Below, piece after piece: positions 3,721 to 30,990 of a DNA stretch of 64,000 nucleotides (within the stretch, counting starts at the first letter, position 1; each line of letters begins with the position of its first letter). The DNA lies in contig NC_087254.1 in assembly GCF_037042905.1 (NCBI RefSeq), positions 22,692,001 through 22,756,000 of the forward strand. The letters are read 5' to 3'. The translations under genes and the position numbers were made by a program. The notes below the pieces were generated by a model that saw only the letters and a program-made list of their open reading frames with translations, made no database searches and had not been told where the DNA came from. Source of the stretch: Lytechinus pictus. Taxonomy: Eukaryota.

Positions 3721-4863
3721 AACGACATTTTTTTTAAATTTGCGAGGCATGATTTCATCCAATTATTTTTTGGTAAGGCACAACATTTCCATAGTGTCAA
3801 AATGATGGTTACTGATAATTGAGTACCGTTAAATTGCGAGCAAGATATATTGCTCTATGTACAAAGGGTATCATGCTTTGATGTGCGGATGGTGTGAAAT
3901 AGTAGCTGGGATGGTTTTAATCTTCCATTACAGTTTTCTGTAAAAAAAAAGTTTCGGAGAGGACAAAATAGAACATTAATTGTCTTCGAAATGGGTGGAT
4001 AAACATGTGTTCTTTTAGACATTTATTATCAAATCAAGTAATATGTAATTATGCGTTAAGATACCGATTCAGAGACAATACTTCTGGAGAGAATTAGCAG
4101 CCCATTTTTTGTTAACATCCCCCCCCCCCCAGGAATTATCTGTACTTCTGCAGTTTTCATTAAATCGCATTTCAATGATAAACTCTGATAAAGATGTGTG
4201 GGCTCAAACTTGCTACAAAAAGACGAAATGAGACAGTAATGTTGGCTTATTATGCCAGACACGGTCATATTTCTAGAAGAGCGCTTGTATTTCAAAGTTG
4301 TTTCCTTGAAATGTTGCTCTAACAGTGTCAATAGCTCGCCATCTTAGATTTGCATCTTTTTATATTTCTTTTTAATGATGAAGAGAAAGCCTTGTATATA
4401 TACACAGATTGTAAAACAACCGTTAGTGAAATACAAAACATGTTCATAATTGTTATCAAAATACTCCTGAAAAATATTCAATTTTCGGGTCAATATATCA
4501 AAATATTCAGCTCGCGATTCGGACTTGCATCAATTATTTTACGAATTACGTCCCGGGGATATGTTTTATGTTAACGATTATAAATTGTGCTTCAAATATC
4601 ACTTTTCAAGTCAATATAGCACAAATTTCAGCTGCCGCACCTTATTTGCTGAATGAGACATGTTTACGGCTACAAAATGTACCTAATTTTTATTTTTCAG
4701 GTTAAATATAAATTTGAGTTCGCGCTTGGCGCACACATTATTTATTATTCTAATGTTTAATGTTCTGGAGATTCGTTCCATGTTCACGATTACAAAATTT
4801 TCCGTTTTCAAGTTAATGTATCCAAAAAACTTCAGCTCGGGTTTCGTTCTCACATTTTTCATT

Positions 4864-6205: not shown

Positions 6206-7439
6206 TGAACTGCCGTTCGTCGGGTAAAATAAAAATTTACAATCCAGCTTTGGTTCGGAGTTAAATTCTGTATCAAAGCCCCCGTCTATTATTATTGTTT
6301 TTTTTAATTTTTATTGATTACGTATGCCTACTTGTAAATACGAAAATAAACTTCGAAGTAAACTTCAGAAGTATAAGAACTTTCTCTTCCGATTTAGGAG
6401 GATTAATTTTTATTATTATCATTATATATCACACTAAGTATGAATTTAATACTAAAAAAAAATTGATGGCAAAAAGAAGCTGCTGAAAACTGCTTATCTA
6501 ATAAAAGAGAGCCAATGGAGTAAATTAGAAAGTCAAAAGGGGCCTAAGCTTTCGATCCTAGCAGAATCTTCGTCGGAAGCAAAAAAATTAACAAATACGC
6601 ATGGATGTAATATACTGGTTGTTAAAAAGGAATCCGAAAAGTCACATTTTGGGACAGAAATATTAAATTCGATACTTCTTTTTTTTGTCAGTCTAATGCT
6701 TTTTGCATGTAAATTATAGCATTGCAGAACCACTCATCACTAAATATCATTGTTCTGAACACTATTTTGGAAAGTTCACCTTGCATAGAGAACAAATGTC
6801 AGTTCAGAAATAAGATAAATCAGAAAATGAATAAATAATAAGAATTATGAGCACTTGTTCATTGGAATGTATTTTTCTAGTTAAGAGCCTTTTTTTTAAA
6901 GAACATATTGATTATATATTTCATTAAACACACATTTCAATAAAGAGTTTTTTTATATATTTTCATTAGCCGAGCATATTCGTGTCCCGAGAAGGTTACC
7001 GACCAACTAGCTATTCTTTTAGAACATGATATGCAAACTACAGTGGTCCTTGAATCCGAATCAAAGTGTCTTTGGAACTTTGTGCTTCAAGGTCATTATA
7101 AAGGTGATAATTGCCTGCGCTTTCAAATATTTTTGTTAAAAATCTCTCTTTCCTTTCTTTTATAGGATGTAGTATCTCAAAGATTTATTCATTGTCTTGT
7201 GGAAAGTTTGAAAGTAATTCTAACAAAAACAACAGCATCAACCAACAAAAAGTGCAATTAAGCAAATATTAAACATTTATATAAAATATGACTGCTCTCC
7301 CTGTATACTTCTTGCTTTCCCGATCTCTGTACTTCTCTTATAGTATGTTGTTTTCGATGGTTTCTTCTGAGTCATTGATACACATAAGTTATTGTCAAGC
7401 AATCAGACTTAATTCTTTAATTTTGTAGATACAACTCCA

Positions 7440-20899: not shown

Positions 20900-23800
20900 G
20901 CCAAGTTGATGAAGACATGGATAACAACAAGGGCAACAAGAAGAATGACAAGGGTGATTATGAGAGTAATACGAAGGGAAACAACGAGGGGGACGAAGAT
21001 GAATATGTGGGTAGTAAGAAAGGCAACAGCGAGGGTGACGAAGATGATTATGAGGTTTATAAGACGGCAAACAACAAGGGTGACGAAGACGATTATGAAG
21101 GTAACAAGAAGGTCAACAATGAGGGTGACGAAGATGATTATGTGGGTAATAAGGAAGACAACAATAAGGGTGACGAAGATGATTATGAGGGTGATAAGAA
21201 GGACAACAATGAGGGTGACGAAGATGATTATGAGGGTAATAAGAAGGACAACATTGAGGGTGACGAAGATAATTATGAGGGTCATAAGAAGGTCAACAAT
21301 GAGGGTGACGAAGATGATTATGAGGGTAATAAGGAGGACAACAATGAGGGTGACGAAGATGATTATGAGGGTAACAAGGAGGTCAACAATGAGGGTGACG
21401 AAGATGATTATGAGGGTAATAAGAAGGACAACAATGAGGGTGACGAAGATGATTATGAGGGTAACAAGAAGGTCAACAATGAGGGCGACCAAAATGATTA
21501 TGAGGGTTATAAGACGGGAAGCAACAAGGGTGACGAAGATAATTATGAGGGTATTAAGACGGCAAACAACAAGGGTGACGAAGATTATTATGAGGGTAAC
21601 AAGAAGGTCAACAATGAGGGTATCGAAGATGAATATGTGGGTTGTAAGAAAGGCAACAGCGAGGGTGACGAAGATGATTATGAGGTTTATAAGACGGCAA
21701 ACAACAAGGGTGACGAAGACGATTATGAAGGTAACAATAAGGTCAACAATGAGGGTGACGAAGATGATTATGTGGGTAATAAGGAATACAACAATAAGGG
21801 TGACGAAGATGATTATGAGGGTAATAAGAAGGACAACAATGAGGGTGACGAAGATGATTATGAGGCTAATAAGAAGGACAACATTGAGGGTGACGAAGAT
21901 AATTATGAGGGTAATAAGAAGGTCAACAATGAGGGTGACGAAGATGATTATGAGGGTAATAAGAAGGACAACAATGAGGGTGACGAAGATGATTATGAGC
22001 GTAATAAGGAGGACAACAATAAGTGTGACGAAGATGATTATGAGGGTAATAAGGAGGACAATAATGAGGGTGACGAAGATGATTATAAGGGTAGTAAGAA
22101 AGACAACAATGAGGGTGACGAAAATGATTATGAGGGTTATAAGACGGGAAACAACAAGGGTGACGAAGATAATTATGAGGGTATTAAGACGGCAAACAAC
22201 AAGGGTGACGAAGATGATTATGAGGGTAACAAGAAGGTCAACAATGAGGGTGACGAAGATGAATATGTGGGTAGTAAGAAAGGCAACAGCGAGGGTGACG
22301 AAGATCATTATGAGGGTATTAAGACGGCAAACAACAAGGGTGACGAAGACGATTATTAAGGTAACAAGAAGGTCAACAATGAGGGTGACGAAGATGATTG
22401 TGAGGGTAATAAGTAGGTCAACAATAAGAGTGACGAAGATGATTATGAGGGTAATAAGAAGGACAACAATGAGGGTGACGGAGATGATTATGAGGATAAT
22501 AAGACGGCAAACAACAAGGGTGACGAAGATGATTATGAGGGTAATAAGAAGGTCGACAATGAGAGTGACGAAGATTATTATGAGGGTAGTAAGAAAGACA
22601 ACAATGAGGGTGACGAAGATGATTATGAGGGTTATAAGAAGGACAACAATGAGGGTGACAAAGATGATTATGAGGGTTATAAGAAGGACAACAATGAGAG
22701 TGACAAAGATGATCATGAGGGTTATAAGAAGGACAACAATCAGGGTGACAAAGATGATTATGAGGGTTATAAGAAGGACAACAATGAGGGTGACAAAGAT
22801 GATCATGAGGGTTATAAGAAGGACAACAATGAGGGTGACAAAGATGATTATGAGGGTTATAAGAAGGACAACAATGAGGGTGACAAAGATGATTATGAGG
22901 GTTATAAGAAGGACAACAATGAGGGTGACAAAGATGATTATGAGGGTAGTAAGAAAGACAACAATGAGGGTGACAAAGATGATCATGAGGGTTATAAGAA
23001 GGACAACAATGAGGGTGACAAAGATGATAATGAGGGTTATAAGAAGGTCGACAATGAAAGTGACGAAGATGATTATGAGGGTAATAAGAAGGACACCAAT
23101 AAGGGTGACGAAGATGATTATGAGGGTATTAAGACGGCAAACAACAAGGGTGACGAAGACGATTATTAAGGTAACAAGAAGGTCAACAATGAGGGTGACG
23201 AAGATGATTGTGAGGGTAATAAGTAGGTCAACAATAAGAGTGACGAAGATGATTATGAGGGTAATAAGAAGGACAACAATGAGGGTGACGGAGATGATTA
23301 TGAGGATAATAAGACGGCAAACAACAAGGGTGACGAAGATGATTATGAGGGTAATAAGAAGGTCGACAATGAGAGTGACGAAGATTATTATGAGGGTAGT
23401 AAGAAAGACAACAATGAGGGTGACGAAGATGATTATGAGGGTTATAAGAAGGACAACAATGAGGGTGACAAAGATGATTATGAGGGTTATAAGAAGGACA
23501 ACAATGAGAGTGACAAAGATGATCATGAGGGTTATAAGAAGGACAACAATCAGGGTGACAAAGATGATTATGAGGGTTATAAGAAGGACAACAATGAGGG
23601 TGACAAAGATGATCATGAGGGTTATAAGAAGGACAACAATGAGGGTGACAAAGATGATTATGAGGGTTATAAGAAGGACAACAATGAGGGTGACAAAGAT
23701 GATTATGAGGGTTATAAGAAGGACAACAATGAGGGTGACAAAGATGATTATGAGGGTAGTAAGAAAGACAACAATGAGGGTGACAAAGATGATCATGAGG

Positions 23801-24382
23801 GTTATAAGAAGGACAACAATGAGGGTGACAAAGATGATAATGAGGGTTATAAGAAGGTCGACAATGAAAGTGACGAAGATGATTATGAGGGTAATAAGAA
23901 GGACACCAATAAGGGTGACGAAGATGATTATGAGGGTTATAAGAAGGACAACAATGAGGGTGACGAAGATGATTATGAGGGTAATAAGAAGGTCGACAAT
24001 GAGGGTGACGAAGATGATTATGAGGGTAACAAGAAAGACAACAATGAAGGTGACGAAGATGATTATGAGGGTTATAAGAAAGACAACAATAAGGGTGACA
24101 AAGATGATTATGAGGGTTATAAGAAGGACAACAATGAGGGTGACAAAGATGATCATGAGGGTTATAAGAAGGACAACAATCAGGGTGACAAAGATGATTA
24201 TGAGGGTTATAAGAAAGACAACAATGAGGGTGACAAAGATGATCATGAGGGTTATAAGAAGGACAACAATGAGGGTGACAAAAATGATCATGAGGGTTAT
24301 AAGAAGGTCGACAATGAGAGTGACGAAGATGATTATGAGGGTAATAAGAAGGACACCAATAAGGGTGACGAAGATGATTATG
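20900..24382. repeat. 45-bp minisatellite, left arm (about 76 units; consensus GAGGGTGACGAAGATGATTATGAGGGTAATAAGAAGGACAACAAT) with higher-order repeats
   Basis: Strict 45-nt period. Diagnostic variants recur at 630-bp (21001/21631/22261) and 810-bp (22321/23131) intervals. Confidence 0.95.
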
Positions 24383-25024
24383 TTATTCCCTAATTCGACT
24401 CTCAATCGTGAATAAATTATTTTCAGTCACGCCTCACTATCCTTAAGCACAACCAGTGCAACAACATCAACACCTGAAATAGAAAACATTTATATATACT
24501 TTACAAAAAACATACCTGTTTCGAGGGGAGCACCAAGCTTCGACGGCAAGACAGCACGAACGGTACTTACTGACGAATGTACTTGCTCACTCTGAGGCCT
24601 CCCACTGAGTTCAGATCTCGTAGAACTCATCAATGTACTGTATATGCTGTAAGGCCTATCCATCCATCAGAATTCTCTTTGCTCTATCTTCTTGCATCCA
24701 GTCAATCGTCCACATATCCATCCCGAATAAGACGTCCGTACTGTGCAGTGTCGAACTCGGTCAGTGAATTCCGAATCGTTTAGGAATTCAGACACTCCTC
24801 ACGCAAGCATTGTTATGCTAATCGGATACTTCTGCTAAGAAAAGAAAATGTATTTATTCCCTAATTCGACTCTCAATCGTGAATAAATTATTTTCAGTCA
24901 CGCCTCACTATCCTTAAGCACAACCAGTGCAACAACATCAACACCTGAAATAGAAAACATTTATATATACTTTACAAAAAACATACCTGTTTCGAGGGGA
25001 GCACCAAGCTTCGACGGCAAGACA
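24383..25024 (-). repeat. 3' split direct repeats B2 (24383..24553), A2 (24729..24853) and B1 (24854..25024)
   Basis: The two B copies (171 bp) read identical. A2 and A1 (125 bp) differ at one position (CTGTGCAGTG vs CTGTGCTGTG). Confidence 0.93.
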
Positions 25025-25239
25025 AGCTAAACATATAGCTCCCCCTCTCAGTCAATCAAAGAACGGGTAAACAAGAAAATTAGTTACACAACGCAATCAT
25101 TTCAATTTAACCAACTTTAAAGTATAATGAGAATAATACATGTCTCATTCAACAATCTCATCGTACACCTACAATCCATCTTTAACAAAGTTATACGTAT
25201 AATCATACTGAGGCTAATTTACCCGGTATAAAAATAATT

Positions 25240-26214
25240 CTAAAGCCCCAAAGTCATAGAAACTGAAAGACAATCCGTCATATTGTCTTTCATATATCCA
25301 TCCTTAGCAGTCTCCGACCTCCACCTACCATGTTTCTTAAACAACCTGTCTGGAACACCAAAGTTCGCTGCTGCTGTGGCTCCGCCCCTTCGGAGGCTAT
25401 GCATGCCAAAACTCTTTGGATTCAACCCTACTTTCACCAACGCCTCTCTCAATAATTATAAACATCTAGTATAAGACAACTGTCCACGTCTTAACTTGTA
25501 ACTATTACTGGATTTACAGTAATTTAGAGGCCTAAAATGAAATTCTTCATCAGAGGCATCGTTAAGCCCCGCTGCAATCAAATATTTCCTCAAAGCTAAT
25601 ACTGGGCAGGTGGGGGAATCTGTATATAGCACCTATAGAAACCCATGCTCCTTGCCCGTAAATATCGGTTTTACTTTTCATGATGAAAATATTCACATGA
25701 GACAAAATACAAGTCTAAATCACATCTATGAATATGTATCATTTCATCAAATCGTAGAAAGCCTGCGTATGAAATCAAAATCATAGCACATAATCGAATA
25801 TCTAATAGACTCGTTGAAGATCCATACTTCTCAACAACTGCTTTCAAAATGTCTGGGGTTATAACTTCTTTCTTAACGATCGGTTTGTTTAGTAATTTAT
25901 TTAAACCTTGTAAAACAATATGTATGAACTTGCGATCACAGGGATTAACATTCATCCTTGACTTGCAGTCAAAATGCCACTTAATGGCGTAAAAAAGCCG
26001 ACTCTATCCTCGAATAAGGAGCTTCTCTTTGATACAAATGAATAAGATAGCGACTAATATCTTCTGGTTCTGCTGTGTCAGAATTTACCTTATTTTGCTT
26101 ACACCAATCTCTCCAGATATTCAACGCTCTGTTGTATTTACTCATAGTGTATCAGCTCTCGAAGCTGTCAAGACCTTGTTCAAAGTTATATCATATCCTT
26201 CATGAAGAGAATTT
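25240..26214 (-). pseudogene. Tyrosine recombinase of the PAT-like element (frameshifted)
   Basis: YAGFLRFDE (catalytic R), KTD, HSLRRGGATAA (H-x-x-R) and HGRWRSETAKDGY (H/W..Y), spread over several frames. Confidence 0.9.
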
Positions 26215-26903
26215 CTGGATTTAAGAAAAATTAAAGAAAACTTAAGCTTGTATATATATTTATCTCAATACAATATATTCAATTTGTGATAAATTCTAAA
26301 GTTCAGTCATTCTTATCAAATTCTCAAAATTTAATCACTTCTAATACGTTTTACAGCCATGACAGCAAAATTAAATATTAGCTATGCAGCTATCCTCAAA
26401 CCAGATGGTTTTATATTTTCACTAAAATTTCAGTATGAAATTCATTAGATCACAATTCCATATCAGAATTCGTTCCAATCGTCTTGAAGGCTTAGCAAAA
26501 CAATAGCTTTGGGATTCATTTCCTTTGCGAAAATATTTATTTTGCCTTAAAAACACTCGCAAAAAACTTTCTGAAACATTTTATTCTCAAGAATTATGTA
26601 ATTTTGAGACTTTGAATGTTTTCAATCATCACCAATTTCTTCATTCTGAGCTCCGCTGCCAGTAAATTATAACTAATTTGAGAATGAAATCTCATATCAA
26701 TTCCTTATCAACCTTTACGATGGTTATCCTTTTACATAATCACAACATTCTCCAATTTCCATCACCACTTCTTTGCTCTGCAGCATAAGTGGATCCTAGC
26801 TATGCAGCTATCTGCCATGCGGCCGTGTAAAAATTACATGTTGCATTCCAACAGTATAATTTTGAATTAACCTCCATCAAATGGATTTATTACATACCAA
26901 CAT

Positions 26904-27802
26904 TCATGTCAGCCATCTCTCACAAACCGTTAAGGCGTAGACATAAGACCGGGCTTTGGAATTTCTTTGTCCCAAAAATGGATTTTTTTTTTTGTTTTGT
27001 TTATTTCTGCCTTGAACGAAAATTCCTTGAGGATTATCAATTTTGAAGTATTCAGAGATTAAGGAACGAAAATCACTTTGTTCAGAGAAAAGAATCGGCC
27101 AGAAGGGTGCAGACGGCCAGAAGGGAACAACCAAAGTCCCCCTAGCAGAACGAACCTTCAGATGCTTAAGTACTTGTCCTATACATTCGATAGGTGGAAC
27201 CAACCAATTATTCTCGCCCGACCAATCACATGAGAAGGAATCAACATGACCTGTTAGGGGACACCAATATTTAGAATTGAACTTCTTAATTTTGAAATTA
27301 AAATCGTCCGCAAATCTTTCCACAGTGTGAGGGCCCCAGATTTTGTCCAAAAATCCGAAAAATTCATCTGACACACCCCAATCATCAAAATCTATGATGC
27401 GACTTAGTGCATCTGCAAAACGGTTCTCCTCTCTGGGAACCCAATGAACGTGAAGACTAATGTGGTTTCTTTTACACAAATCAAAGATGTGTAAACTCAT
27501 CTCATGCGATTCTGCAATCATATTTCCTTTATTTACAATCGATTCTACTCCTTTATTATCACAGAAGACCTTGACAGTTTTATGTCTCAAGTGAGATGCA
27601 AATGTTCGAAGTGCCATAGTTACTGACTTGAGTTCTCTCCAAGTGGAGCTTTTAACCATTTCAAACTCAATCCAATCTCATCCCATTTCATGCCTGCGCA
27701 CTCAGAAACCCAGACCCCGCAGCCTGATGGACTTGCATCAGAATAGATGAAAGTCTGTGGAACTGAATAAGCAGAAATAATGTTTACGTTAAGAATATGC
27801 AC
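26904..27802 (-). pseudogene. RNase H plus DNA N6-adenine methyltransferase-like domain of the PAT-like element
   Basis: RNase H motifs YSDAS, SSTWREL, CDN and WVPREENRFADALSR. These are followed by WGPHTVERFA..FNSKYWCP..DWSGENNWLVPP..GTLVVPFWPSAPFWP, the DIRS/PAT MT domain. Confidence 0.88.
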
Positions 27803-28810
27803 ATTCTTCTCCAGAAGAAGAACACGAATATTAAATCATCACTATTGATCACATTATGTCCTATCCCAATGTACCCTCCGGATGATTTCGTGATGCATAA
27901 ATCTGGTTTTAAAATGAGTAACTTTGCCAAACACTGGATACAATGTATCTTTCCAACTATAACTACGATCTTTCGTGCTGAAACCTCGGGCAATTCTGCT
28001 TGAAATGAATCTAAACATAACTCAAGATCCTTCATCCTTCTTTCAGTAATCTTTATATAAGCTACTCTGCTTTCCCGTGGTAATCCTAACCAATCCAAAC
28101 ACTGGACAGGAGTCCATTGAGATATTTCTCAACATCTGGTATCAAACCTGCTTCAAGTATGTCATTTTTCACCGTCTTGACCATAGTATCATATGAATCA
28201 AAGGAAGCAGCACGACCCAATCATCTATATACAAAGCAATGAAAATACCATTTCTACGCCAATGATTAACAATAGGCTTGAATCATGTAATGAAAACAAA
28301 GGTAGCTGTTGCCAACCCAATGGCAAAACCTAAAAAGAGAAAAACCTTGTACCACTACCAAAATCCCAACTAAATCCTACAATTGTCCATGCACTTGAAA
28401 AATGTAATAATGATGATAACCTTGCTTAAGTTCAAAGGAAAGCATAAAATCTCCCTTTTTTAAATAAGACATGACTACATTCCATAATAGTGTTCTTCCA
28501 CAAGTGTTAGTTGACATAACGTAAACCAAGAATCAGTCTCTTTTTATATCTGAACTCTGAATTGAATCTGAAAGGGGGTTAACATCATGGGGCGCAGTGG
28601 TGGATTCAACAACCAAACCATTTTTAATAATAATTCGTTAATGGCTTCAGAAACGAAATCGGGATCGATGTCAATGCTGACTTATCATCTTATTATAAGG
28701 TACACTTGTAACCGTGTTCAGTGACATCTACAGCAATTTGAGATGCATCAGTTGATTTCCAAATTGTAAGGAAGCATTCAGTCTACCTTTAACCAAAGGT
28801 TCTGAATTTC
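27784..28810 (-). pseudogene. Reverse transcriptase of the PAT-like element (multiple frameshifts)
   Basis: VKGRL (about 28790), FMLSFELKQGYHH (about 28410-28450), frameshifted LP-GLATA (about 28305-28330), IALYIDD (28221-28241), WLG. Confidence 0.85.
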
Positions 28811-29186
28811 ATTGATCATACTCATAATTTATCAAATAAAATTCTTCCTCCTACCCTGCACATCTTGTCAAATCAACAATAAGTTAACGTTACTCGATGT
28901 TTCCCAACCGAAACAATGCTCTGTTTCTGTATTTCTTAATTTAGAAGGGCCCGCTGACGGACCAGGAGTAGTCAATATATTCCAGATTGTTTGATCTGTG
29001 TCATATCTATGTCTAGGTTCATTAGTTAAAGGTGGAATTTAACCAAAATAACACATCTTTTCTTAACATATAATTATGGACTGGGTAGGATCAAGATAGA
29101 TTGCTTTGCTACGCGCTTCTGATCATTCTACTCTTTAGTTTTCAAATACCACACTTCGTCAAATACAGAACAAAACTGACATTTAC

Positions 29187-30173
29187 CTTGCTCATTTGAC
29201 CATGATCAATGGATCCTTTAACTCTGTTGAGCATTGTTATCTCTGAAGGATGAATCTTGCTTCCTGATACCTGGGCAACTTCTCCACTGCCCGTGTCTAC
29301 CACAGGCAAAACATTCGTCGGTGGTCTGAAGCCACTTGCATACCCGCGCCAACTATTTTGTACATATAAGTTGGCAACACTGCCAAGCGAATATCGATTT
29401 CTTGAGAACCTTGAAAATTTTCAACATTCTTGCCCAATATAACCCTTGTTTGTTGAACGAAATACCTTACGCTTTCTATTTACACAAGCCTGAGCTTGCC
29501 TCATTCTTTTCTCCCTCATCAGAGTCGCATGTTATTAATTAAAACACTCAAGTATTCATCCACTGCGGACCAACCTAAAATATAAAAATTATCTCTTTAT
29601 ATTTATTTGATTAATCTCCCATAATTAAGTCATATAAAGTAATTCCGCTGAAAAACGAACAGCTTCCATTAACAACATTAGGCCATATCTATTATGTACA
29701 ACCGTTCATAAATTTCAAAAGCAATAGCCTAGTTTGGAATTTTCATTCATCTTTATCTCACTAACCTGCTTCAGATTCATCTGCTTTTCTGATATGTTTC
29801 TTCCTTTTTGTTATATCTGCAATACCTTCCTTCAGCAAAGCAAGGGCTAGCCGCGCCCGCTGCTTACCTTACTCTAATAAGGCCAATTTCTTATCCAACT
29901 CCTCCTGGCGTCTAGAATTATATTCATATTGTACCTTATTACCTTTCGAAAGACATCTCCGACGCCCTTTTTTAGTTGTAGAAGCTCCGCTGACCCGGGC
30001 AATGTATCAAGAATCAACATAATCAAACAGCCAGCCCAATCTTTAAACGAGCCAATGCTTCCTTTGTAGCATTGCTTACAAGAAGGCGAAGGGACTCCAG
30101 ATTATTGAGTAGAATTTTCTGAAACTGCCTTTAATTTGTGGCCTAACCCGAGGTTAATTTCTTGATTCGCCAT
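29187..30173 (-). pseudogene. gag-like ORF1 of the PAT-like element, interrupted by a GT-AG intron-like insert (29575..29765)
   Basis: KGNKVQYEYN...GIADITKRKKHIRKADESEAG|WSAVDEY...EKRMRQAQ, plus a degenerate zinc knuckle CFACGRHGQWRSC at about 29275..29313. Confidence 0.75.
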
Positions 30174-30258
30174 TATTTTATATTTAACATCGAATCCAAA
30201 CGTAGATCTATTACGATAAGGCCTATAGAGTTTAACACGTGGAAGAAGCGTTGATAAA

Positions 30259-30383
30259 AAGACGTCCGTACTGTGCTGTGTCGAACTCGGTCAGTGAATT
30301 CCGAATCGTTTAGGAATTCAGACACTCCTCACGCAAGCATTGTTATGCTAATCGGATACTTCTGCTAAGAAAAGAAAATGTAT
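30259..30383 (-). repeat. 5' split direct repeat A1
   Basis: Matches 24729..24853. Confidence 0.93.
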
Positions 30384-30990
30384 AGGGTTATAAGAAGGAC
30401 AACAATGAGGGTGACGAAGATGATTATGAGGGTAATAGGAAGGTCGACAATGAGGGTGACGAAGATGATTATGAGGGTAACAAGAAAGACAACAATGAAG
30501 GTGACGAAGATGATTATGAGGGTTATAAGAAAGACAACAATAAGGGTGACAAAGATGATTATGAGGGTTATAAGAAGGACAACAATGAGGGTGACAAAGA
30601 TGATTATGAGGGTAACAAGAAGGACAACAATGAAGGTGACGAAGATGATTATGAGGATAACAAGAAGAACAACAATGAAGGTGACGAAGATGATTATGAG
30701 GGTTATAAGAAAGACAACCATAAGGGTGACGAAGATGATTATGAGGGTAATAAGAAGGACAACAACGAGGGTGACGAAGATGATTATGAGGGTAACAAAA
30801 AGGACAACAACGAGGGTGACGAAGATGATTATGAGGGTAATAGGAAGGACAACAACGAGGGTGACGAAGATAATTATGAGGGTTATAAGAAGGACAACAA
30901 CGAGGGTGACGAAGATGATTATGAGGGTAATAAGACGGGTAACAATAAGGGTGCTGAAGATGATCATAAACGGGGAGGCAAGGAGGTGAA
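30384..30990. repeat. 45-bp minisatellite, right arm (about 13 units)
   Basis: Same unit; resumes exactly where the left arm was interrupted. Confidence 0.95.

What the first reader, a model, noticed from the sequence alone, without database searches (positions are those of the whole stretch)
29575..29765. Sense-strand spliceosomal intron retained inside the gag ORF of a retrotransposon
Seen: on the minus strand gag reads ...ATC AGA AAA GCA GAT GAA TCT GAA GCA G|GTTAGT [191 nt, AT-rich, stop-containing] TTTTTATATTTTAG|GT TGG TCC GCA GTG GAT GAA TAC. Removing the GT..AG segment joins KHIRKADESEAG to WSAVDEY, which I recall as the AD-x-S-x-x-GW-x-x-V-x-EY motif of DIRS/PAT gag proteins. Established: reverse transcription normally purges sense introns, and intron-bearing retroelements are rare (Penelope/Athena, a few YR elements). 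Inference: this family copies unspliced RNA while splicing it to make Gag. AGGTT occurs at both junctions, so the intron may instead have been gained by an insertion with target duplication.
Basis: partly seen in the sequence, partly recalled or inferred. Interest (0 to 1): 0.75.

Follow-up and report, generated by a model that had tools for sequence, protein, structure and literature searches.

The report
Intron kept inside a jumping gene's gag
A sea-urchin retrotransposon of the tyrosine-recombinase (Pat1-like) kind carries a 177-237-base intron-like segment in the most conserved motif of its coat-protein gene; all about 65 genomic copies keep it, which is unusual because copying through RNA normally removes introns, but splicing itself was not shown.

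Summary
The sequence is as described. On the minus strand, ...KADESEA-G is followed by a 191-nt, 27% G+C segment (29765..29575) running from CAG|GTTAGT to TTTTAG|GT, then WSAVDEY.

The recalled motif is real. It is the invariant core of this Gag family and is contiguous in 66 of 84 public homologues, in two related elements read as DNA, and in other Pat-like families of this genome. Cutting at GT..AG restores it with no residue gained or lost.

About 65 copies in the genome carry the segment. I found none without it, and the segment occurs nowhere else.

The window copy is not a gag ORF. It belongs to a family of about 59 copies with stops and frameshifts in gag and RT that all examined copies share. 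That family cannot make Gag and was probably moved in trans.

The case for a working intron rests on one relative, C16:6765454-6770395. Its gag exons (181 and 139 aa), pol (729 aa) and recombinase (331 aa) frames are open. A 177-nt segment with the same splice ends and a TAG at the junction is the only break in its gag.

Segment ends are conserved between lineages. Interior and length are not.

No RNA evidence was available. My verdict is a probable true intron (about 0.6), a new variant of the known intron-retaining retroelements.

The parts
29575..29765 (-). The 191-nt GT..AG segment (candidate phase-1 spliceosomal intron). 5' CAG|GTTAGT, 3' TTTTTATATTTTAG|GT, candidate branch point TTAAT about 35 nt upstream of the AG, 27% G+C.
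   Evidence: Present in 30/30 aligned copies. Junctions found 64 and 65 times in the genome.
29764..29868 (-). Last open piece of gag 'exon 1' (GKQRARLALALLKEGIADITKRKKHIRKADESEAG). It is preceded by an in-frame TAA (29869-29871) present in every family copy examined.
29522..29574 (-). Start of gag 'exon 2': (G)WSAVDEYLSVLINNMRL, then a stop. Gag continues in another frame (a +1 frameshift in this subfamily).
29221..30173 (-). Decayed gag as a whole, from the ATG of MANQEINL... to the degenerate CCHC zinc knuckle (CFACGRHGQWRSC, 29221-29352). It matches Gag profile positions 76-95, 107-135, 135-144, 154-174 and 219-253 in shifting frames.
24383..30383 (-). Whole Pat1-like tyrosine-recombinase retrotransposon copy, 6001 bp, defective.
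30259..30383 (-). Split direct repeat A1 (5' end)
24854..25024 (-). Split direct repeat B1
24726..24855 (-). Split direct repeat A2
24383..24553 (-). Split direct repeat B2 (3' end)
28089..29150 (-). Reverse-transcriptase remnants, several frameshifts. Collinear with RVT_1-bearing relatives, so these are frameshifts and not introns.
26907..27677 (-). RNase H plus methyltransferase-like region, 257 codons open.
   Evidence: RVT_3; homologues carry PF05869 Dam
25243..26151 (-). Tyrosine-recombinase remnants in several frames.
20955..24382 (.). 45-bp minisatellite, left part of the array into which the element inserted.
30384..30964 (.). Same 45-bp minisatellite, right part. The repeat phase continues across the insertion, so there is no target duplication.

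Best explanation
The segment is a genuine U2-type spliceosomal intron. It was gained at a CAG|GT site in the invariant Gly codon of the ...ADxSxxG|WxxVxEY motif of Gag, in the ancestor of one sea-urchin Pat1-like clade. In complete elements of the clade, unspliced RNA can give only a 181-aa N-terminal Gag, because a TAG lies at the 5' splice site. Spliced RNA would give full Gag with the zinc knuckle. Only unspliced RNA is reverse-transcribed, so every new copy keeps the intron. The window copy is a dead, trans-mobilised member that merely inherits it. Shown: the anatomy, absence from relatives, presence in about 65 copies with none found lacking it, open exons in one complete relative, and conserved ends with a variable interior. 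Inferred: that splicing occurs, and that spliced RNA is excluded as a template.
For: Removal restores the invariant motif exactly. An Amphiura element (L050) and a metagenome contig (L049) read ADKSAAGWGAVDEY and ADKSEGGWKVVDEY without interruption in DNA. At least 15 other Pat-like loci in this genome are contiguous across profile position 152. The 5' site matches MAG|GTRAGT at 8 of 9 positions, there is a pyrimidine tract and a TAG|G 3' site, and the segment is AT-rich. 64 exon-1 hits correspond to 64 exon1-segment junctions, with none lacking the segment. The C16 relative has an exact 5' junction (GCA GGT TAG), a TTTAG|GTTGG 3' junction, a 177-nt segment, exon frames of 181 and 139 aa, pol of 729 aa and recombinase of 331 aa, all open. 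Its exons score 116 and 120 bits against the Gag profile. Segment length differs between lineages (177; 187-193; 235 and 237). Two interior 24-mers match only the family, while junction 24-mers match C16/C14 with 0-3 mismatches. The segment occurs nowhere else in the genome.
Against: There is no transcript evidence. The 5' site has T at +3, which is uncommon. Inside the defective family the segment is as conserved as the exons, so there is no selection signal there. Their intactness rests on frame lengths and pattern matches, and one tool output (369-aa frame) conflicts with later ones. Only one fully open relative was seen. If splicing happened, intron-less copies might be expected, and none exist.
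Confidence: 0.6

Rival explanations
1. A dead-on-arrival insertion. About 190 nt of filler or foreign DNA landed in gag of the clade's ancestor and is never spliced. The whole clade lacks its own full Gag and is moved by Gag from other Pat-like families. GT..AG is a by-product of an AGGT(T) target duplication or microhomology.
For: AGGTT at both junctions. The ~59-copy family is plainly non-autonomous yet amplified recently, at 98-99.4% identity, so trans-mobilisation does occur here. Other intact Pat-like families exist in the genome. No intron-less copy exists.
Against: In C16 both gag exons stay open and score highly against the Gag profile, although the lineages have diverged (87-89% RNase H identity, different segment lengths). 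The splice-site-like ends are kept in about 65 copies while the interior diverges. No source copy, terminal inverted repeats or other copies of the segment were found.
Confidence: 0.27
2. A split Gag without splicing. The 181-aa N-terminal product and a separately initiated C-terminal, zinc-knuckle product are made from unspliced RNA and work as two chains.
For: Two separate open frames of 181 and 139 aa in C16.
Against: The break falls inside the most invariant motif of the family. The exon-2 frame opens at most about 10 codons before the junction, so a start codon there is unlikely. I know of no precedent.
Confidence: 0.05
3. A transposon-derived intron (introner-like, or an antisense SINE or MITE) that brought its own splice signals.
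For: A 5-nt direct repeat at the ends, and a T-rich 3' end that would be an A-rich tail on the other strand.
Against: All matches to the segment lie inside copies of this clade. No terminal inverted repeats. No Rfam family.
Confidence: 0.05

Closest known systems
Echinoderm-form Pat1-like elements (SpPat1 of Strongylocentrotus purpuratus), PAT group of the DIRS order (PMC4157794; Goodwin and Poulter 2001, from my own knowledge)
   Same: RT, RNase H, methyltransferase-like domain and tyrosine recombinase. Split direct repeats A1...B1 A2...B2. Gag with a CCHC zinc knuckle. Insertion without target duplication.
   Different: In the papers I could search, no intron in gag is described for this group. 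Here one clade carries it in every copy.
Penelope-like elements that keep introns (Arkhipova et al. 2003, Nat Genet 33:123, as cited in PMC3846280)
   Same: Sense-strand spliceosomal introns survive retrotransposition.
   Different: A different class: GIY-YIG endonuclease, target-primed, no Gag. For those elements an antisense template has been proposed (PMC3846280). Here the intron splits gag of a recombinase element.
Retroviruses and some LTR retrotransposons with spliced mRNAs (copia gag mRNA, Ogre intron; my own knowledge)
   Same: Unspliced RNA is the template, and spliced RNA is a message only.
   Different: There Gag comes from unspliced RNA, or splicing removes pol. Here full Gag would need the splice.
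Introners and other transposon-born introns (my own knowledge)
   Same: A short direct repeat containing AG|GT at both ends.
   Different: No other copies of the segment in the genome, and no inverted repeats.

Membership tests
Pat1-like (PAT) tyrosine-recombinase retrotransposon | Reverse transcriptase and RNase H | tested here: met
   RVT_3 match, E 1.2e-7. Collinear translated matches to relatives whose genes carry RVT_1. A YIDD motif in family copy L042. RT is frameshifted in this copy.
Pat1-like (PAT) tyrosine-recombinase retrotransposon | Methyltransferase-like domain after RNase H | tested here: inconclusive
   The direct Pfam scan listed only RVT_3. Homologues covering 87-91% of the 251-aa frame at 55-59% identity carry PF05869 Dam.
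Pat1-like (PAT) tyrosine-recombinase retrotransposon | Tyrosine recombinase | tested here: met
   Phage_integrase matches on two fragments, below Pfam's cut-off (16.9 and 20 bits against 27.1). Collinear with a PF00589 gene in L049. A 331-aa open frame in the C16 relative.
Pat1-like (PAT) tyrosine-recombinase retrotransposon | Split direct repeats A1 ... B1 A2 ... B2 | tested here: met
   In L031, 1066-1195 equals 6602-6731 and 6435-6603 equals 6894-7062. The same layout holds in the window copy.
Pat1-like (PAT) tyrosine-recombinase retrotransposon | Gag with a zinc knuckle | tested here: met
   CFACGRHGQWRSC in the window (H to Q change) and CGRHGHWRSC in L031. Aligns to profile positions 217-253.
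Pat1-like (PAT) tyrosine-recombinase retrotransposon | No target-site duplication | tested here: met
   The phase of the 45-bp minisatellite continues across the 6001-bp insertion.
U2-type spliceosomal intron | GT...AG ends with extended consensus, pyrimidine tract and branch-point candidate | tested here: met
   CAG|GTTAGT (8 of 9 positions), TTTTTATATTTTAG|G, TTAAT about 35 nt upstream. Judged by eye against the general metazoan consensus, not a sea-urchin model.
U2-type spliceosomal intron | Removal restores a conserved reading frame; homologues lack the segment at that site | tested here: met
U2-type spliceosomal intron | Flanking exons open and conserved in functional copies; read-through blocked | tested here: met
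   C16: frames of 181 and 139 aa, and a TAG at the junction. Taken from coordinates and pattern matches; the sequence was not read.
U2-type spliceosomal intron | Spliced transcripts exist | not testable with these tools
   No RNA data. A search of the protein representatives with a 57-aa exon-1 piece found only a spurious bacterial repeat protein.
Introner / transposon-derived intron | The same unit dispersed in many unrelated sites | tested here: not met
   Every match to the segment lies in this clade.
Introner / transposon-derived intron | Terminal inverted repeats and a target duplication | tested here: inconclusive
   No terminal inverted repeats. The AGGTT direct repeat is present, but four of its five bases are expected at any proto-splice-site intron.
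Intron-retaining retroelement (functional class) | A sense intron present in retrotransposed copies | tested here: met
   About 65 dispersed copies on at least 20 contigs carry it, and the ~59-copy family is 98-99.4% alike.

The most novel reading that the evidence does not exclude
The intron is a built-in switch. Spliced RNA is the only message for full Gag. Unspliced RNA, marked by sequences in or across the intron, is the only template for reverse transcription and also yields a short Gag. That would be a retrovirus-like division of labour evolved independently in a tyrosine-recombinase retrotransposon. It would explain why no intron-less copy exists among about 65.
Probability: 0.2. Interest if true: 0.8.

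Novelty: new variant of a known kind. Interest (0 to 1): 0.58.

Why it matters
Retrotransposons are expected to lose sense introns, and the few exceptions have shaped ideas on how their RNA is chosen for copying. A recombinase-type element whose full coat protein needs a splice, yet whose copies all keep the intron, would give a second, independent system for asking how template RNA and messenger RNA are told apart. It would also be a dated, clade-specific case of intron gain at a proto-splice site inside a mobile element. Practically, gene finders will miscall this Gag unless the intron is modelled.

Tried and rejected
1. 'Many introns' as the cause of the fragmented pol. Rejected: translated matches to relatives are collinear with no extra DNA, so these are frameshifts.

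2. An alternative genetic code. Dropped once intact relatives were seen to read normally.

3. A MITE or SINE origin. No inverted repeats and no copies outside the clade.

4. RNA structure or a known RNA family in the segment. z = -1.3 and no Rfam match.

5. A segment open in frame in C16 (369-aa frame). Rejected by the exact TAG-bearing junction and by the 181- and 139-aa frames.

6. Fetching the C16, C14 and outgroup loci. I did not try another route.

7. The search of protein representatives with a 57-aa exon-1 piece. The only hit was a chance match to a bacterial repeat protein. The job was wasted, and the third word search was not used because alignment A2 of short pieces would give a poor profile.

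8. Intron-less copies were sought exon by exon instead.

9. Literature searches found no report of an intron in a PAT or DIRS gag. The original Goodwin and Poulter papers are not held, so prior description cannot be excluded.

Full report
**What is in the window.** It reads ...AAA GCA GAT GAA TCT GAA GCA G | GTTAGTGAG ... TTTTTATATTTTAG | GT TGG TCC GCA GTG GAT GAA TAC. The segment is 29765..29575, 191 nt, 27% G+C against 43% in the flanks, with stops in all frames. It lies in phase 1 inside a Gly codon.

The 'gag ORF', however, is not open in this copy. The exon-1 frame runs only 35 codons back to a TAA. The exon-2 frame stops after WSAVDEYLSVLINNMRL. Gag then continues in another frame.

**The element.** It occupies 24383-30383 on the minus strand, 6001 bp. 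It sits inside a 45-bp minisatellite whose repeat phase continues across the insertion, so there is no target duplication. It has these features:
- Split direct repeats A1...B1 A2...B2.
- Gag remnants with a degenerate CCHC knuckle.
- Frameshifted RT.
- An open RNase H/methyltransferase-like region. Pfam gives RVT_3, and the closest homologues carry PF05869.
- Tyrosine-recombinase fragments.

This is the echinoderm form of Pat1-like elements as defined in PMC4157794. Earlier notes of this scan call the genome a sea urchin, and one names Lytechinus pictus. I did not test that.

**The family.** A 551-nt probe found at least 40 full matches among 66 candidates. Most copies are 98-99.4% alike over 6 kb, and the window belongs to a small sister subfamily. 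All 30 aligned copies hold the segment. All copies examined share the same stops and frameshifts in gag and RT. Translated comparison with relatives is collinear through pol, so those breaks are frameshifts and not further introns.

**Is the motif real?** Two related elements were fetched through their RNase H proteins. One is from the brittle star Amphiura filiformis (L050), and the other is a metagenome contig (L049). In DNA they read ...HRNKLIRFADKSAAGWGAVDEYESDD... and ...LRNKHIKIADKSEGGWKVVDEYKTEE... without interruption.

A word search with the Amphiura Gag returned 84 proteins from echinoderms, corals, molluscs and others. Of these, 66 carry AD.S..GW..V.EY. In a 24-row alignment R146 K148 I150 R151 D154 S156 G159 W160 V163 E165 Y166 are invariant.

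With a profile of these proteins, in every local copy the exon-1 piece ends at the profile position where the exon-2 piece begins. Cutting at GT..AG therefore restores the invariant core exactly.

**The wider clade.** The same profile run on the whole genome shows many Pat-like loci that are contiguous across position 152. It also shows a small set broken exactly there: the family, three copies on C14, one on C10 and one on C16.

Exhaustive pattern searches found the following:
- The 5' junction TCTGAAGCAG|GTTAGTGAGATAAA (up to 3 mismatches) occurs 64 times, with 0 in the control.
- The 3' junction TTTAG|GTTGGTCC... occurs 65 times, with 0 in the control.

The 64 exon-1 protein hits are the same loci as the 5' junction hits, with two exceptions. 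One copy has a 3-nt insertion (seen), and one extra C10 copy appears in the junction list only. I therefore found no intron-less copy. This comparison was made exon by exon.

**The key relative.** C16 matches the 5' junction exactly, so it reads GCA GGT TAG, a stop at the splice site. It has TTTAG|GTTGGTCTGCAGTAGATGA at the 3' junction, which gives a 177-nt segment. Its exon-1 frame is 181 aa and its exon-2 frame is 139 aa. The exons score 116 and 120 bits against the Gag profile. Its pol frame is 729 aa and its recombinase frame 331 aa.

The '369-aa open frame' printed conflicts with these results, and I treat it as an artefact.

These statements therefore rest on coordinates, frame lengths and matched patterns.

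**Signature of an intron.** Segment length varies between lineages: 177 nt in C16, 187-193 in the family, and 235 and 237 in C14. The junction-proximal 24-mers match C16 and C14 with 0-3 mismatches. Two interior 24-mers match only family copies. A translated interior piece finds one C14 copy at only 54% identity and not the others. Exon-1 identity to those relatives is 86-90%.

Conserved ends, a drifting interior and conserved open exons are what a working intron shows. Inside the dead family the segment and the exons diverge alike, as expected for neutral decay.

**Origin.** All matches to the segment lie inside the clade. There are no terminal inverted repeats, no special fold (z = -1.3) and no Rfam match. 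The AGGTT repeat is weak evidence for a target duplication, because AG|GT at both ends is what an intron in a proto-splice site shows anyway. Gain by an insertion that was spliceable from the start remains possible.

**Mechanism, with its status.**
- Shown: the segment has passed through retrotransposition in about 65 copies, so the template RNA was unspliced.
- Inferred (about 0.6): in complete elements the segment is spliced to give full Gag. Unspliced RNA would give only the 181-aa product.
- Speculative (about 0.2): the intron, or sequences across it, mark the RNA that is copied, as the packaging signal does in retroviruses. This would explain why intron-less copies are absent.
- Main rival (about 0.27): the segment is never spliced, and the clade borrows Gag from other families.

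**What is known.** Intron retention is documented for Penelope-like elements (PMC3846280, citing Arkhipova et al. 2003). From my own knowledge, spliced messages are known in retroviruses, copia and Ogre. My searches found no description of an intron in a PAT or DIRS gag. The founding papers are not in the library, so a prior report cannot be excluded.

**Verdict.** The window copy itself is dead. This is probably a true intron of a Pat1-like clade, a new variant of a known kind, and RNA evidence is still needed.

Noticed in passing
window 20955-24382 and 30384-30964: A 45-bp minisatellite (76 + 13 units, 88-90% matches) gives spurious ORFs of up to 1222 aa on both strands. The element inserted into it with the repeat phase preserved.
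   Followed up: partly
G000 C26:122326-123097 and C13:29901437-29902233 (coordinates only): Another Pat-like family has its Gag match interrupted a few codons further on (profile positions 156-160) by about 295-326 nt. This may be a second, independent interruption near the same motif.
   Followed up: no
G000 C17:14163950-14163973: One copy has GTAAGT instead of GTTAGT at the 5' junction. The same copy has AG|TT at the 3' junction.
   Followed up: no
L009-L030, just after the ...DEY codons: The major subfamily carries a 30-nt deletion immediately downstream of the junction motif. The window subfamily instead has a +1 frameshift there. The divergent copy L048 stays in frame (LSDLIACDSNEGEK...).
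   Followed up: partly
G000 C14:13719744-13814587: Three related, partly intact copies lie within about 95 kb on one contig. This may be a local duplication.
   Followed up: no
Genome search output, against 53-54: The 'open_frame_aa' value for the two C16 gag matches (369) disagrees with later calls (181 and 139) and with a TAG seen at the junction. The column can mislead when two matches share a frame.
   Followed up: yes
L031 about 4500-4550 and other family copies: An A-run of variable length (translated as a string of K) lies at the end of the RNase H/methyltransferase region and shifts the frame between copies.
   Followed up: no
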